A stretch of 64,000 nt of DNA from Macrostomum lignano (taxonomy: Eukaryota), in contig NIVC01001427.1 of the NCBI GenBank assembly GCA_002269645.1, forward strand, positions 62,001 through 126,000, written 5' to 3'. Positions within the stretch are counted from its first letter, which is position 1. Each line of letters begins with the position of its first letter. The notes beneath the pieces are model-generated. The model was not told the origin of the DNA, did not search any database, and saw only the letters and a list, made by a program, of their open reading frames with translations. Shown here piece by piece: positions 641 through 24,325 of the stretch. The position numbers and the translations under genes were made by a program.

Positions 641-3215
641 TTAGTACTCTCCTAGGCATTGCGTGTTCAGGTTTGCAAATAAAAAAGAAAATGGCACCGC
701 CATCATTGCGACTCCGAAGATGACGAACGCTTTGAAGAACACTCGATCAGCGGAAGATCCGACAGTCTTCCATTCGTTTTCGACAAAAGTGGCGTTGGAA
801 GTCTGTGATGCCGATACGTCGCCATCTGCATCGGCTGTGGTGCGTGTGACTGTCCGCTTAGAACTTTCTCCGACAACGAATCGGTTGAGGAAGAGTGCAC
901 GGACGACCCGACTGCTGACGCTGCTCTCTTGCCTGAAGTGACAGCTGAGAACGAACGCGTTGCAGAGCACATTTACAATTGTCATGACCACGGCCAAGCT
1001 GAAGTACCAGGCTGGAATGTGAGGCAAGTGTCAAATTCAGATAGACTGCTCACGCAATGGAAGCAATCGAGAGACTCACTGATAAACGGCACGGACTCGC
1101 TCTGCGTAGGCGTGTAGTTGCCAACCAGCTGCAGGAACACGCACATGGACAGCACGATGGTGATGCTGAAGGAGACTCGCTCGCCACACTCGGGAGGCAG
1201 GCAAAAGGCGAGCGCGGAGACTCCAAGGAGAAGAATGCAGGGCAGCATCAGGTTTATCATGTAGAAAGTCGGAAGTCGCTGTAATTACGAGCGTAGAATT
1301 CCTAATCTAGTATTTCATGTTTCTACGAGTAAAGCATGATTTCAAGAAATTGTACCAAGATCTGGACAACAACTCACTTGAAATCCGACCCGGAGCTCGG
1401 CTGTGTCGTACAGGCCAAACGATCCGTTTTCTAGCCGGGCCCACAGAATGCAGAACTCGCTGCTCTTGATGACGAGCACATCAGGCGCATCATTCTGGTA
1501 CAGGGACTTGATGCGGACTCGAGTCGATCCCGTGACTTGCTGCAGACTCGAGAGCCTGACGAGACAGTTTTGCTCATCGAACGGAAACAGCTGCATTTGC
1601 ATGCTGCACTTGGTGGACAGAATCATTCCTGTGCTCCACAGCACAATGCCTGAGGACATCACCGAAAGAATCGCGCGGCCCTCTGTAGCGTCCGAGATTT
1701 CCACCCTAGAGTGAATTGTTTAAATGAAGGCACTCATTGAGAGCAGTTTCAATTCGTCAGTCGTCAGAACGTCAGAACTTAATTTCTTCAGTACTTAGTC
1801 TCTGCAGTGCATGCATCAAGCAGGATATCTTTTTTAGTTTGATTGAGTAGCTTTTTATTTAATCCATTTGCTTGTAGAGCGTATGTCCGAGACACAAAAA
1901 TTTTGTTGCACTGGGATACCTGCAAAGGTTTTCCTAATTGGGTTATTTTATACCTAAGTTCGAAATTTTCCCTTTATCAGTTTGCGTTGCCTTAAGAAGT
2001 CCAAGGTTATGGCCTCTTCTTTCAATGCGTCGATCCAACGCTGAGCGGAAGAATTAAAATTAAACAGAATTAAATGGCGCTGAATGGAGTTGCAACCGCG
2101 AGCACGACAATAGCTCGAGTTTAACATTGAGCTGCTCCTTTTTCAGTTTAGTATTAATCAGTATAATAATAATAATAATGAATATATTATTACACAGTAT
2201 TAATATTGCTAATGCACTATGTTCGAACATATCGACTCCTATTTAATGAGAAGTTCTATTAAACTCTCAAAAAATAACGTCGATGTCCCTAAGCTACTGA
2301 ACTAAAAAGCTAAGCAACCCACGTCGGGTTTTTTCGCACAAGTGACGAAAAACAGCGGTCGCACTTCCGCAATCTAAAGTGGCCTATCTAGCGAATGTAT
2401 CATCTATTGTGGTCTGTAGTGTTGAAAGCAACCGGCATGTTCTCGATATCTTTTTTAGGTCCAAGCACTGAACCATATTCACTAATTCTCTTTTGTTAAA
2501 TTTCAAGTTTGAGCACGCGTAAAACAACTCACGCATCGTAAAAGGATGCGTCAGGTTGCCACAGGTACGAAGCCGGAAGGCTGATTGCGCTGATATTGTC
2601 CAGACTGGAGTTGAACTTTCCTTTCCAGGCCAGGCGACTGTCGGTCCAGTGCTGCAATTACAGCTCATTAAAAATTATCTCTGCAAGGATTGAAAGGAAT
2701 CTTTCTTGTATCAAAGGTATCTAAGACTTAAAGCTTACCACGTTAAGCCACACCATGAGCTTTATTTCCTGTTTTGTGGAGTCCTGAAAGAAGTGTCAGA
2801 AAGTGGGTCATCCATTTACCAAAAAAATCTGCCTATCAGGATTAATGAGTGATTCGAGTTCATTGAGCATCGAAATACGATTAGTAAACCTACAAGCAAG
2901 CGTACAAACCTTAGAGATTTAGTATATTAGATTATGCTGAAGCAGGAAACGGAAGAAACTCGAAAAGGGATGCACTAAAAAGCTTAGCATGACTCGTTTA
3001 ACACAACTGCTCACCACTTTAACGATGGAGTTCAGGTAGATGAAGACATTGAGGGTGTTGGCGAAGCCGCTGTCAGGTGGCGGTCGGATCGCTTTGTTAT
3101 ACTCGGTGAAGAGCTTCAGCGCTGCCGCGACGGCATCGTCAGGTGAGGCGGGCGATGCGGCCGCTGACACAGCAGCACCGAGCAAGGCCAGGCAGATGAG
3201 GAGTCGCGCCGACAT
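641..3215 (-). CDS. nAChR-like Cys-loop ligand-gated cation channel subunit, copy A (6 exons, 420 aa)
   Basis: Exons 3215-3015, 2783-2739, 2651-2533, 1705-1378, 1278-1080, 1011-641 with GT-AG junctions give 1263 nt in frame. Signal peptide MSARLLICLALLGAAVSA; WTDSRLAW; WQPDASFY; Cys-loop CSMQMQLFPFDEQNC (C-x13-C); M1 FYMINLMLPC; M2 GERVSFSITIVLSMCVF; M3; pre-M4 EWKTV..ADRVFF. Confidence 0.9.
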
Positions 3216-21724: not shown

Positions 21725-24325
21725 CTAATTTTGCTGCATTGCTTGTAGGCAGCGACTGCGCGGCTGCACAGCGTAGAACCCAAGTGACACCGCCGTCATA
21801 ATGACCGTGAACGCGTTGAAGGTCCAGAAAAACAGCCAGTCTGCCGCGTCAGCAACAATCGCCCATTCATTGGCTTGAAGACTTGTGCGGCTGGTGCCGT
21901 AAGGCGGATCCGAGTGCTGGCTTGAGGCGGTCTCACTGGCGACGGTATTGTTCGTTAGGTTCCTCTTGGCCACGAAGCGGTTGAGAAAAAGCAAGCGGAT
22001 GAGCCGGCTGCTCACCCGATCGCCGCTTTGCTGTTTGAAGTGGCAGCTGATCACGAACGCGTTGCAGAGCACATTTGAAATTGTCAGCAGCACCGTAGTC
22101 ATGAAGCAGACAGCTGAAATCATCATAAAAATTTTGAATGACATTAAGCCTATCTTGCCAGTTCACGGATTCTGCCCGAATATCTTAAAACTCATCAATT
22201 CTTAGGCCAGCTGAGTGAATTCCCTAACAATAAAGTTGTTTATAGATTTTTTGCACCGCAAGTGCATGAAGGTAATATTATTTTTCAAACACGCGTTTTA
22301 ATTGTTAATCCGATCTCAATCCAGATAGATATATAGGTAGATATGATAGATATATAGATAGATAGATAGATAGATAGATAGATAGATAGATAGATAGATA
22401 GATAGATAGATAGATAGATAGATAGATAGATAGATAGATAGATAGATAGATAGATAGATAGATAGATAGATAGATAGATAGATAGATAGATAGATAGATA
22501 GATAGATAGATAGATAGATAGATAGATAGATAGATAGATAGATAGATAGATAGATAGATAGATAGATAGATAGATAGATAGATAGATAGATAGATAGATA
22601 GATAGATAGATAGATAGATAGATAGATAGATAGATAGATAGATAGATAGATAGATAGATAGATAGATAGATAGATAGATAGATAGATAGATAGATAGATA
22701 GATAGATAGATAGATAGATAGATACATAGATAGATAGATATATAGATAGATAGATAGATAGATAGATAGATAGATTTGCGTTGTTGTCAAGGGATACCTA
22801 TCCAAAAGCTTGTGATTACACTACTTGCGCACAAATTTCTTAGCATTGCAAAGGACTCGTGTGTGTGGTAACTGAATTAATAGAGACGTGAACGAGCCCT
22901 TAGCAGTCATTAGCTAAAAAGTGTCGAATATCTGAATATTCTGAGCCCTCAGAACAAGAGTGTTATTCTCACTGATGAGCGGCACGGACGCGCTCTGCGT
23001 GGGCGTGTAGTTGCCAGCCAGCTGCAGGAACACGCACATGGACAGCACGATGGTAATGCTGAAGGAGACTCGCTCGCCGCACTCGGGCGGCATGCGGAAG
23101 GCGAGCGCGGAGATGGCGAGTAGGAGAAGGCAGGGCAGCATCAAGTTCACCACGTAGAAGGTCGAGGCTCGCTGAAATGGAGAAGCCAGTCATCATTTAA
23201 TATCCTTCTCTGATCCATCAGCAGTGTTTTTATAAAAAAAACTTGCTTTAAATTTTATCCGAATGGTTGGTGTGTCCAGTCCGGTTGGTTCACCTGACAC
23301 CATTTCCGCAGAAAGTACGCAAAATTCATTGTTTCCAATGAGGTAGTTATCTATGGCTGCGCCCTCCATCAGCGACTTAACTTGAACTCGAACAGTGTCT
23401 GGAGCCAGTTGGGGCAGGAGTGGCAGATGGCAGACCTGGGAGTCGAATGGAAAGTACCGCATGTCCATATCGCACTTGCTCACTAAGATCAGCGACTTGC
23501 CGATTTCAACGATCCCTGCGCTCGTCACTTGCGCTAAAAGCATGTTGATCGTCGTCTCCTTGACGCTGATGCTGAGGTTTAAAAAAACTTTACTTTATAA
23601 TTCTCCTGACAAAAAAGAACCCCGACCTGAACAAAGAGCTACTCACGCGTCGTAAAATGAAATGTCCGACAGCCAGAGCATACTTGCCGGCACACGGATC
23701 AAGGATACGTCATCGAACCTTGAGTTGAACGCACCGAGCCACTTGAGTCGCGAATCAGTCCAAAACTGGAATGGATTATAAAATCTTTTTTTCCCTGTTT
23801 TGTGCACCTTAGTGAGTAAATTTCATCGTATAAGTGAGCATTTAAAAAGCTTTTGAGGCTGATTTTGTTTGCTGAATCAAGCACCGTTGATACGTGTAGT
23901 TAGACCGAAAAAACTGACCTAATTAAAGAATAATTTAATTATTCTTCTCACCATAGTGAGCCAAACTTTCATCGTTATCTCCTGACTCGAAGAGTCCTGC
24001 AATGTTGCAAGCATCAAGTTAGATTGTAGACCCTGTTTTGGCGTATTTAGCGAGACAAATTTAAACTGTTAATGCGGTTTCTGACCACTTTGAGTAGATT
24101 GTTGATGAAGACAAACACATTGATAAGGTTGGCATTTCCGTTGTCTGGCGGTGGCCTGGCTGCACTTTTGTAGTCTGTCTCCAGCTTCAGAGCTGCCATT
24201 ATCGCCTGGTCTGGAGACGCGTCCTCGGCTACGACTGCGGCAACGACGAGAAAGAGACAGGCGGCCGCCGCTGATGTGACCCCCGCTCCGGGAGACTGGC
24301 TTCCTGGTTGCTTTCTGGCCAGCAT
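21725..24325 (-). CDS. nAChR-like Cys-loop subunit, copy F (6 exons, 438 aa; GC donor at intron 4)
   Basis: Exons 24325-24086, 23996-23952, 23765-23647, 23571-23247, 23171-22973, 22113-21725 (1317 nt). Cys-loop CDMDMRYFPFDSQVC; intron 4 starts GCAAGT at the position where paralogs have GT. Confidence 0.85.
22322..22775. repeat. (GATA)n microsatellite, about 450 bp, in intron 5 of copy F
   Basis: Over 100 near-perfect GATA units. Confidence 0.98.

What the first reader, a model, noticed from the sequence alone, without database searches (positions are those of the whole stretch)
1080..23171. Constant pore, variable sensor: the M2 exon is nearly nucleotide-identical in all paralogs, even the dead one
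Seen: the 61-nt core GGCGAGCGAGTCTCCTTCAGCATCACCATCGTGCTGTCCATGTGCGTGTTCCTGCAGCTGG is identical in A, C, D and E. It differs by one synonymous base in F, and by one synonymous base plus a 6-nt duplication in pseudogene B. Adjacent exons and most introns are barely alignable at DNA level. B carries at least six inactivating lesions in other exons while its exon 5 is almost pristine, so protein-level selection alone does not explain this. Inference: recurrent ectopic gene conversion homogenises the pore/assembly module while ligand domains diverge, keeping subunits co-assembly-compatible and allowing combinatorial pentamers (conceptually like protocadherin or opsin conversion tracts). An RNA-level constraint such as an editing or splicing element is an alternative.
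Basis: partly seen in the sequence, partly recalled or inferred. Interest (0 to 1): 0.85.

Follow-up and report, generated by a model that had tools for sequence, protein, structure and literature searches.

The report
Gene conversion homogenises channel pore exon
Six neighbouring acetylcholine-receptor-like channel genes of the flatworm Macrostomum lignano share an almost letter-identical stretch coding for the pore, most likely because the copies keep overwriting each other there (gene conversion), which is a well-known process in gene clusters rather than a new kind of biology.

Summary
The 61-nt core is exact in A, C, D and E. F differs by one synonymous base, and B by one synonymous base plus a 6-nt duplication.

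The window is Macrostomum lignano DNA. It holds six Cys-loop (nAChR-like) subunit genes of six exons each.

The homogeneous tract is the last 111 nt of exon 5, coding for the M1-M2 loop, the M2 pore helix and the M2-M3 loop.
- Synonymous difference in the tract is 0.04-0.19. It is 0.6-0.9 (saturated) in exons 1-4 and 6.
- An equally conserved M3 block has pS 0.66.
- Codons are identical in 24 of 30 invariant-residue columns in the tract, against 6 of 61 elsewhere (p = 3e-11).

Best explanation is recurrent interlocus gene conversion, confined to a homology island that purifying selection on the pore keeps alive.
- A and C are a patchwork of 98-99% blocks, including promoter and intron, separated by unalignable blocks.
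- GC3 rises to about 0.9 exactly in the homogenised segments.
- The residual variation sits at third codon positions.

The adaptive "co-assembly" story is unsupported. The pseudogene argument is weaker than stated, because B's copy carries a pore-disrupting duplication. This is a new example of a known process, and the cross-species test could not be run.

The parts
1080..1278 (-). Gene A exon 5 (M1, M2, M2-M3 loop). The homogenised tract is 1080-1191.
6145..6349 (-). Pseudogene B exon 5, 205 nt, with a tandem AGCATC duplication inside M2. The tract is 6145-6262.
11850..12048 (+). Gene C exon 5. The tract is 11937-12048.
14348..14546 (+). Gene D exon 5. The tract is 14435-14546.
20392..20590 (+). 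Gene E exon 5. The tract is 20479-20590. The whole exon is 92% identical to F.
22973..23171 (-). Gene F exon 5. The tract is 22973-23084. One synonymous change lies in the core.
644..3215 (-). Gene A, nAChR-like subunit, from ATG 3215 to the last codon at 644. The 5' end of exon 4 is disrupted by an intron 3 of about 820 nt.
5413..7538 (-). Pseudogene B. It has three in-frame stops, a frameshift, lost exon 2 splice sites and a 225-nt insert in exon 6.
10664..12478 (+). Gene C, with six intact exons.
13331..15280 (+). Gene D, intact.
19329..21034 (+). Gene E, equal to UniRef M. lignano protein P0001 over its exons. This assembly has two 1-nt homopolymer frameshifts relative to that protein.
21728..24325 (-). 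Gene F, with an intact frame, a GC donor in intron 4 and an (AGAT)n array in intron 5.
2980..3473 (-). A/C high-identity block 1: 494 nt at 98%, with partner 10406-10899. It covers 258 nt upstream of the ATG, exon 1 and the start of intron 1.
907..1206 (-). A/C high-identity block 4: about 300 nt at 98-99%, with partner 11922-12221. It covers the 3' part of exon 5, all of intron 5 and the first 100 nt of exon 6.

Best explanation
The six genes are old tandem and inverted duplicates of a flatworm nAChR-like Cys-loop subunit. Synonymous sites elsewhere in the genes are saturated. The 3' 111 nt of exon 5 codes for the M1-M2 loop, the M2 pore helix and the M2-M3 loop.

I propose that this stretch has been repeatedly overwritten between copies by interlocus (non-allelic) gene conversion, so it has a much younger common ancestor than the rest of each gene.

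**Inferred mechanism.**
- Strong purifying selection on the pore slows divergence there.
- This stretch therefore stayed similar enough for strand invasion after the introns and ligand-binding exons had drifted beyond recognition.
- Each conversion restores identity, so the island sustains itself.
- Heterology in the flanking introns stops heteroduplex extension, so tracts end at or inside the exon.
- The centre of the island (the 61-nt core) is covered by most tracts and is the most uniform part.
- Repair is GC-biased, which drives third positions to G/C.

**Shown here:** the low synonymous divergence, the mosaic structure, the GC3 pattern and the exon-bounded extent.

**Inferred:** that conversion is recurrent, and the homology-island feedback.

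Uniformity of the pore is probably a by-product that selection tolerates, not a purpose.
For: 1. **Synonymous divergence.**
   - In non-A/C pairs pS is 0.6-0.9 in exons 1-4 and 6.
   - It is 0.07-0.19 in tract codons 30-66, with pN 0.01-0.05.
2. **Matched control.** The M3 block has the same protein conservation (pN 0.05) but pS 0.66, against 0.12 in the tract.
3. **Codon identity.** In invariant-residue degenerate columns, codons are identical in all six genes in 24 of 30 tract columns, against 6 of 61 elsewhere. Fisher p = 3e-11, and p = 2e-10 with A and B dropped.
4. **Type of residual variation.**
   - What varies in the tract is mainly third positions: 24% of third positions against 7% of first and second, p = 0.014.
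   - Synonymous sites are therefore not specially protected. They have simply had less time to diverge.
5. **Direct evidence of conversion in this cluster: the A/C mosaic.**
   - Three blocks are 94-99% identical: upstream DNA with exon 1, exon 4, and the 3' part of exon 5 with all of intron 5 and the start of exon 6. Exon 3 is 92% identical.
   - These alternate with unalignable stretches: introns 1-4, codons 7-22 of exon 5 (13 of 48 nt differ) and the intracellular loop.
6. **Incompatible site patterns in exon 5.**
   - At codons 20-22, A groups with B/E/F against C/D.
   - At codons 1-4, 25-31, 52 and 57, A groups with C.
7. **Pair-specific fragments.**
   - E-F across exon 5: a run of 17 polymorphic sites, global permutation p = 0.0006.
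   - B-F in exon 6: p = 0.01.
   - Both.
8. **GC3 tracks homogenisation.**
   - It is 0.86-0.92 in the tract in all genes.
   - In the 5' half it is 0.83-0.90 only in E/F/B, which share that half. It is 0.59-0.66 in A/C/D, which do not (p = 0.0004).
   - It is mostly 0.5-0.7 in other exons, with a range of 0.40-0.84.
9. **Pseudogene B.**
   - It has 9 private changes in the 87-nt 5' half against 1 in the 111-nt tract (p = 0.006).
   - Its intron 5 is alignable only to A/C at about 70%, while the adjoining tract is 96% identical to C.
10. **Precedent.** The same reasoning (synonymous identity plus raised GC3) is the accepted evidence for regional conversion in fish protocadherin clusters (PMC1852091).
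Against: - No orthologous DNA from another species, or from the second M. lignano subgenome, could be obtained. The defining test of concerted evolution was therefore not run: whether paralogs within a species are closer to each other than to their orthologs.
- Outside the A/C pair, identity stops within about 10 nt of both exon 5 boundaries. Constraint on the exon itself would predict that too.
- The monomorphic core gives a strict GENECONV-type test no power. Most pairs are not individually significant.
- The core is more uniform than the rest of the tract: 3 of 63 variable sites against 11 of 48, p = 0.008. This could reflect an added constraint rather than a centre-of-island effect.
- The three pairs among E, F and B are not independent, so the GC3 contrast is suggestive only.
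Confidence: 0.7

Rival explanations
1. The exon carries a nucleotide-level function shared by all copies, and that function constrains its synonymous sites. Candidates are an RNA editing or dsRNA element, a splicing enhancer, or a small-RNA target that co-regulates the family.
For: - Identity ends at the exon boundaries in all non-A/C pairs.
- The 61-nt core is more uniform than the rest of the tract.
- The whole exon folds slightly better than shuffles (z = -2.2).
- The exon 5 copies of E and F form a 212-nt, 92% inverted repeat 2.4 kb apart in convergent genes. They could form dsRNA if transcription reads through.
Against: - The tract itself folds no better than shuffles (z = -0.8), and there is no Rfam family match.
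- The flanking introns are randomised, so no conserved intronic complementary sequence exists.
- Residual variation is concentrated at third positions, as in ordinary young coding DNA.
- GC3 enrichment follows which genes share a segment, not which segment it is.
- Conversion is independently evident in non-coding A/C blocks.
Confidence: 0.1
2. Ordinary purifying selection on the pore protein, combined with strong preference for G/C-ending codons, produces the identity with no exchange between copies.
For: - The tract is the most conserved protein segment (pN 0.01-0.05).
- Nearly all of its codons end in G or C (GC3 about 0.9).
- Paralogs outside the window (P0002-P0004) also keep SITIVLSMCVFLQL or a near-identical form.
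Against: - The M3 block has equal protein conservation but pS 0.66, and it uses mixed codons: AAT/AAC, GTG/GTT, GCG/GCA/GCT, TGT/TGC.
- The M1 half of the same exon has many invariant residues with different codons. Only 1 of 13 such columns is codon-identical.
- Pseudogene B keeps the tract although it is no longer under protein selection.
Confidence: 0.05
3. One or a few past non-allelic recombination or exon-replacement events spread a single exon 5 through the cluster. These might be unequal crossover or cDNA-templated repair. There is no ongoing, recurrent conversion.
For: - Tract pS is not zero (about 0.1). It is similar across most pairs and star-like apart from the A/C pair, as expected after a burst followed by ordinary divergence.
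- Tracts bounded by the exon would fit an RNA or cDNA template.
Against: - Identity is nested: A-C tract pS is 0.04, E/F/B pairs 0.07-0.09, and the other pairs 0.09-0.19.
- Tract lengths differ between pairs. E/F/B share the whole exon, while A/C/D share only the 3' two-thirds.
- A carries a short E/F-like patch at codons 20-22.
- Together these require several events of different ages.
- The A/C blocks at 98-99% are much younger than the family-wide tract.
Confidence: 0.1
4. The identity is an assembly or polishing artefact, in which reads from one paralog overwrote the others.
For: The assembly has at least two homopolymer indel discrepancies in gene E relative to an independently derived UniRef protein, so the consensus is not perfect.
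Against: - Mis-polishing can only erase small differences between sequences that are already nearly identical. It cannot create 111 nt of identity from saturated divergence.
- The copies keep private substitutions and a private 6-nt duplication.
- Their flanks are unique, and long reads would span several genes of a 25-kb cluster.
- The UniRef proteins P0001 and P0002 show the same residues in the tract.
Confidence: 0.03

Closest known systems
Regional gene conversion in clustered protocadherin variable exons (fugu, zebrafish, human; PMC1852091, and Noonan et al. 2004 as cited there)
   Same: - Paralogs sit in a tandem cluster.
- One region of each coding unit is near-identical at the nucleotide level, synonymous sites included, while the ligand or recognition part diverges.
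- GC3 is raised in the homogenised part.
- Nearby paralogs are the ones affected.
   Different: - Here the tract is very short (about 110-200 nt) and lies in an internal exon of multi-exon genes.
- It is bounded by unalignable introns.
- It codes for an ion-channel pore rather than a membrane-proximal ectodomain or cytoplasmic part.
- Half of the copies look damaged.
Interlocus gene conversion among Caenorhabditis paralogs, and general theory of duplicated genes under conversion (PMC3966223, PMC3924837, PMC3966226; titles and abstracts)
   Same: Exchange between linked paralogs depends on homology. It homogenises part of a gene, while other parts escape once they have diverged.
   Different: I found no report in those searches for a Cys-loop receptor family or for flatworms.
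Nicotinic acetylcholine receptor / 5-HT3 type Cys-loop cation channels (PDB 5kxi beta-2, 8bl8 5-HT3A)
   Same: - Pfam Neur_chan_LBD plus Neur_chan_memb.
- A C-x13-C Cys-loop.
- Glutamate at -1' and leucine at 9' in M2.
- An M2-M3 loop with the motif SVPLI.
   Different: - Only about 25-30% identity to solved receptors.
- No vicinal cysteines in loop C, so a non-alpha type.
- A very short intracellular loop.
- Ligand and stoichiometry are unknown.
Exons under RNA-editing constraint (ADAR targets in channel genes such as the GluA2 Q/R site; from general knowledge)
   Same: The pore-coding exon shows unusually high nucleotide conservation.
   Different: Those cases depend on a conserved intronic complementary sequence and on conservation between species. 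Here the introns are not conserved between copies and no stable fold is predicted.

Membership tests
Cys-loop pentameric ligand-gated ion channel (nAChR-like) | An extracellular ligand-binding domain and a four-helix transmembrane domain (Pfam PF02931 plus PF02932) | tested here: met
   Genes C, D and F score 96-113 bits on PF02931 and 71-80 bits on PF02932, above the cut-offs of 26 and 28 bits. The best solved relatives are nAChR beta-2 (E = 1e-33) and 5-HT3A.
Cys-loop pentameric ligand-gated ion channel (nAChR-like) | A signature disulfide loop, C-x13-C, in the extracellular domain | tested here: met
   Gene C has CSMQMQLFPFDEQNC. D, E and F have equivalent loops with the FPFD motif. In pseudogene B the motif is FPVD.
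Cys-loop pentameric ligand-gated ion channel (nAChR-like) | Cation-selective M2, with Glu at -1' and Leu at 9' | tested here: met
   CGERVSFSITIVLSMCVFLQL aligns to beta-2 [21 protein letters not shown]. This is inferred from sequence only.
Cys-loop pentameric ligand-gated ion channel (nAChR-like) | Alpha-type agonist site (vicinal Cys-Cys in loop C) and gating by acetylcholine | tested here: not met
   No CC pair is present in the loop C region of any copy. The ligand cannot be determined with these tools.
Interlocus gene conversion / concerted evolution | An excess of identity at synonymous sites in one segment, relative to the rest of the same genes | tested here: met
   pS is 0.12 in the tract, 0.66 in the matched M3 control and 0.6-0.9 in the other exons. 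Codon identity is 24 of 30 against 6 of 61.
Interlocus gene conversion / concerted evolution | Mosaic tracts with sharp boundaries, including non-coding DNA | tested here: met
   The A/C patchwork has 98-99% blocks that include 258 nt upstream of the ATG and the whole of intron 5, separated by unalignable DNA. For the other pairs the tracts are confined to the exon.
Interlocus gene conversion / concerted evolution | Phylogenetic incongruence or incompatible sites along the sequence | tested here: inconclusive
   Incompatible patterns occur in exon 5: A groups with B/E/F at codons 20-22 and with C elsewhere. E-F and B-F fragments are significant by permutation. Most pairs are not individually significant, and the core has no informative sites.
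Interlocus gene conversion / concerted evolution | A GC-biased signature in converted segments | tested here: met
   GC3 is 0.86-0.92 in the tract and mostly 0.5-0.7 in other exons (range 0.40-0.84). In the 5' half it is raised only in E/F/B, which share that half.
Interlocus gene conversion / concerted evolution | Paralogs within a species are more alike than orthologs between species | not testable with these tools
   No DNA of other Macrostomum species or of other M. lignano loci could be reached.
Exon constrained by RNA editing or structure | A conserved double-stranded structure involving the exon (exon plus intronic complementary sequence) | tested here: not met
   The tract folds with z = -0.8. 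Introns 4 and 5 are not conserved between copies. There is no Rfam match.
Exon constrained by RNA editing or structure | A-to-I differences between RNA and DNA | not testable with these tools
   No transcriptome reads are available here.

The most novel reading that the evidence does not exclude
The uniform pore exon may be more than a by-product of conversion. All copies might share a nucleotide-level function. One possibility is dsRNA formed by the inverted exon 5 copies of the convergent genes E and F (212 nt, 92% complementary, 2.4 kb apart), feeding editing or small-RNA co-regulation of the whole family. Alternatively, conversion might be selectively maintained so that diverse ligand-binding domains all feed one standard pore in heteromeric channels.
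Probability: 0.1. Interest if true: 0.7.

Novelty: new member of a known kind. Interest (0 to 1): 0.33.

Why it matters
- **A compact example.** The cluster shows cleanly how purifying selection and gene conversion interact. The most constrained 110 nt of a channel gene stays in the conversion regime long after the rest of the gene has escaped.
- **Phylogenetics.** For flatworm receptor genes, exon 5 must be left out of trees and of dS-based dating. It will also confuse read mapping, primer design and RNAi or CRISPR specificity across the family.
- **Receptor biology.** These lineage-specific subunits differ in their extracellular domains but have a single pore type.
- **What it does not establish.** The data show no new mechanism and no adaptive role for the homogenisation.

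Tried and rejected
- **DNA of paralogs outside the window.** Look-ups for P0002 and P0003 found them not on record.
- **Metagenome scan.** A degenerate back-translated pattern for ITIVLSMCVFLQL found no hits in metagenome contigs. No cross-species test was therefore possible.
- **Strict GENECONV-style permutation (no mismatches, polymorphic sites only).** It has little power because the core is monomorphic. 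Only A-C, E-F (exon 5), B-F (exon 6) and A-D (exon 1) stand out.
- **RNA structure.** The tract gives z = -0.8 and the whole exon z = -2.2, which is not convincing. The Rfam gathering search of the whole window found nothing.
- **Literature.** No report of conversion in Cys-loop receptor clusters or of this M. lignano family was found.
- **Precise intron loss in B as a sign of cDNA-mediated conversion.** Rejected. Intron 2 is deleted imprecisely, leaving about 9 nt that include the old acceptor.
- **A/C as a simple recent inverted duplication.** Rejected because of the alternating 98% and unalignable blocks.

Full report
**1. The observation**

The 61-nt string occurs exactly four times: 1125-1185 on the minus strand, and 11943-12003, 14441-14501 and 20485-20545 on the plus strand. 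It occurs once with one mismatch, at 23018-23078 on the minus strand. None is expected in 100 dinucleotide-preserving shuffles.

Searching the two halves separately finds a sixth copy at 6190-6256 on the minus strand, interrupted by six extra bases. An alignment of the six copies with 300-nt flanks shows a block of about 200 nt of high identity.

**2. What the sequence is**

A protein search with a provisional model of gene C returned Macrostomum lignano Cys-loop receptor proteins as the best hits. One of them, P0001, matches the exons of gene E at 99-100%. The window is therefore M. lignano DNA, or DNA of a very close relative.

Six paralogs lie between 0.6 and 24.3 kb:

| Gene | Strand |
|---|---|
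| A | minus |
| B | minus |
| C | plus |
| D | plus |
| E | plus |
| F | minus |

Each has six exons:

| Exon | Content |
|---|---|
| 1 | signal peptide and N-terminus |
| 2 | 45-nt exon |
| 3 | about 117 nt |
| 4 | Cys-loop exon |
| 5 | 199 nt, coding for M1, the M1-M2 loop, M2 and the M2-M3 loop |
| 6 | M3, a short intracellular loop and M4 |

Genes C, D and F match Pfam Neur_chan_LBD and Neur_chan_memb well above the cut-offs. Their best solved relatives are nAChR beta-2 and 5-HT3A. That alignment places the identical core on the M1-M2 linker and M2, with Glu at -1' and Leu at 9'. No copy has the vicinal cysteines of alpha subunits.

The state of each copy in this assembly:
- C, D and F have clean reading frames. 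F uses a GC donor in intron 4.
- E needs two extra homopolymer bases to encode P0001.
- A lacks a counterpart of the first 17 codons of exon 4 and has an intron 3 of about 820 nt.
- B is a pseudogene. It has three in-frame stops, a 1-nt deletion in exon 3, a lost exon 2 acceptor with intron 2 reduced to about 9 nt, and a 225-nt insert carrying stops in exon 6.

**3. Is the identity more than protein conservation?**

Nei-Gojobori estimates on protein-guided codon alignments give these proportions of synonymous difference (pS) for pairs other than A/C:

| Segment | pS | pN |
|---|---|---|
| Exons 1-4 and 6 | 0.6-0.9 (saturated) | not summarised |
| Exon 5, whole | 0.16-0.40 | not summarised |
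| Exon 5, codons 1-29 (M1) | 0.23-0.68 | not summarised |
| Exon 5, codons 30-66 (the 111-nt tract) | 0.07-0.19 | 0.01-0.05 |

A/C gives pS 0.04 in the tract.

A matched control settles the point. The M3 block NVLCNAFVLSCHF in exon 6 is as conserved in protein as the tract (pN 0.05 against 0.03). Its pS is 0.66 against 0.12.

The codon count gives the same answer. Among columns with an invariant, degenerate amino acid, the codon is identical in all six genes in 24 of 30 tract columns and in 6 of 61 elsewhere. Fisher p = 3e-11, and p = 2e-10 using only C, D, E and F.

Protein-level selection, with or without codon preference, therefore does not explain the tract.

**4. Conversion or nucleotide-level constraint?**

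Several independent lines favour conversion.

(a) Conversion is visibly active in this cluster.
- A and C are not simple recent duplicates. Their alignment alternates between high-identity blocks and stretches that cannot be aligned.
- The high-identity blocks are:
  - 494 nt covering 258 nt of upstream DNA, exon 1 and the start of intron 1 (98%);
  - exon 4 (about 94-97%);
  - about 300 nt covering the 3' part of exon 5, the entire intron 5 and the first 100 nt of exon 6 (98-99%).
- Exon 3 is 92% identical.
- The unalignable stretches are:
  - introns 1-4;
  - codons 7-22 of exon 5, with 13 differences in 48 nt;
  - the intracellular loop.
- Selection on coding sequence cannot produce 98-99% identity in a promoter and an intron next to randomised introns.

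(b) Within exon 5 there are incompatible site patterns. At codons 20-22, A shares its bases with B, E and F against C and D. At codons 1-4, 25-31, 52 and 57, A groups with C.

(c) Tracts differ between pairs.
- E, F and B share the whole exon at 90-92%. A, C and D share only the 3' two-thirds.
- A GENECONV-style permutation test flags E-F in exon 5 (global p = 0.0006) and B-F in exon 6 (p = 0.01).

(d) GC3 follows homogenisation gene by gene.
- It is 0.86-0.92 in the tract of all copies.
- In the 5' half it is 0.83-0.90 only in E, F and B, and 0.59-0.66 in A, C and D (p = 0.0004).
- In other exons it is mostly 0.5-0.7, with a range of 0.40-0.84.
- This is the signature used to diagnose regional conversion in protocadherin clusters (PMC1852091).

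(e) The little variation left in the tract sits mainly at third positions: 24% of third positions against 7% of first and second positions, p = 0.014. This is the pattern of ordinary coding DNA with a young common ancestor. It is not the pattern of synonymous sites under special protection.

(f) RNA-level alternatives find no support. The tract folds no better than shuffles (z = -0.8). The whole exon is marginal (z = -2.2). There is no Rfam match. Introns 4 and 5 carry no alignment signal between copies other than A/C and a weak B-A/C signal, so no shared intronic complementary sequence exists.

**5. The pseudogene argument**

B's tract is not pristine. It has one private substitution and a tandem AGCATC duplication. 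The duplication inserts Ser-Ile between positions 4' and 5' of M2 and would shift the pore helix register.

The working copies have 0-3 private changes each in the same 111 nt. B is therefore no better preserved than they are, and the date of its death is unknown.

Two internal contrasts in B do help.
- Relative to E and F, B has 9 private changes in the 87-nt 5' half of the exon and 1 in the 111-nt tract (p = 0.006).
- B's intron 5 is still recognisably homologous to that of A/C, at about 70% over 50 nt. The adjoining 97 nt of exon is 96% identical to C.

Neutral DNA next to the tract has thus diverged about ten times more than the tract itself, in a gene that is no longer under selection.

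**6. Why the tract stops at the exon boundary**

For all pairs except A/C, similarity ends within about 10 nt of the splice sites. My reading is an inference and was not tested. Conversion needs homology on both sides of the tract. The introns lost homology long ago. The pore segment, being the slowest-evolving part of the protein, never diverged enough to leave the conversion regime.

This also predicts that the centre of the island is converted most often. That fits the observation that the 61-nt core is more uniform than the rest of the tract: 3 of 63 variable sites against 11 of 48, p = 0.008.

Constraint on the exon would predict the same boundary. This is the main reason I keep the constraint hypothesis at about 0.1 probability.

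**7. Artefact**

The consensus is imperfect, given the two homopolymer discrepancies in E. Polishing errors cannot, however, manufacture 111 nt of identity from saturated divergence. Each copy keeps private differences and unique flanks.

**8. What could not be done**

The defining test of concerted evolution needs orthologous DNA. Paralogs outside the window are known only as UniRef proteins and their contigs are not on record. A degenerate-pattern scan of metagenome contigs found nothing.

Those outside paralogs are mildly informative. P0003 and P0004 are about as diverged overall as the window copies are from one another. They carry about 5-7 amino-acid changes in the tract, where the window copies differ from the consensus by 0-3. 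This fits homogenisation that is local to the cluster, but their genomic positions are unknown.

**9. Comparison with what is known, and verdict**

The genes are members of the Cys-loop receptor superfamily of the cationic nAChR/5-HT3 type. They are non-alpha, and their ligand is unknown.

The phenomenon is regional interlocus gene conversion in a gene cluster. The closest described parallel is the homogenised 3' part of clustered protocadherin variable exons. I found no earlier report for Cys-loop receptor genes or for flatworms, so this is a new example of a known process.

The 'constant pore, variable sensor' picture describes the pattern correctly. The proposed purpose, co-assembly compatibility, has no support in the sequence and fits poorly with a cluster in which half the copies look damaged.

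- Confidence that conversion is the main cause: about 0.7.
- Interest: modest.

Noticed in passing
window 19441-19443 and 19819-19820 (gene E, exons 1 and 3): Gene E needs one more base in a C-run and one more in a T-run to encode the UniRef M. lignano protein P0001. As assembled it is frameshifted twice. This is either long-read homopolymer error or a dead allele or subgenome copy.
   Followed up: partly
window 21975-22097 and 22944-23096 (+), against P0001 residues 367-455: The public protein model P0001 is chimeric. After gene E's exon 6 it continues into open frames on the antisense strand of gene F's exons 6 and 5.
   Followed up: partly
window 1714-2534 (gene A, intron 3 and start of exon 4): Gene A has an intron 3 of about 820 nt where C has 65 nt. 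It has no counterpart of the first 17 codons of C's exon 4, and an in-frame TAA sits three codons before the conserved part. A may be a second pseudogene or may use a different acceptor.
   Followed up: partly
window 20384-20595 and 22968-23179: Genes E and F are convergent, and their exon 5 copies form a 212-nt, 92% inverted repeat 2.4 kb apart. Read-through transcription would yield a long hairpin.
   Followed up: no
window 6063-6144 against 1012-1079 and 12049-12116: Pseudogene B's intron 5 is alignable only to the A/C intron 5 (about 70% over 50 nt). The 5' half of B's exon 5 is E/F-like. B is therefore itself a mosaic.
   Followed up: partly
window 23245-23246 and 22323-22775 (gene F): Intron 4 of F begins GCAAGT, a GC-AG intron. 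Intron 5 is 859 nt and holds an (AGAT)113 microsatellite. The start of F's M3 reads TVCF where the others read TWYF.
   Followed up: no
window 7753-8507: Two adjoining minisatellites lie between B and C: 38 nt x 11 and 30 nt x 12. They share the motif ACTCAGTGCTAGATCAT.
   Followed up: no
window 41526-43336 and 49145-64000: The right third of the window is packed with minisatellite arrays. One is a 22-nt unit repeated 109 times at 56856-59255, with GC skew of about +0.63. G+C rises from about 0.45 to 0.5-0.59. No further receptor exon 5 was found there.
   Followed up: no
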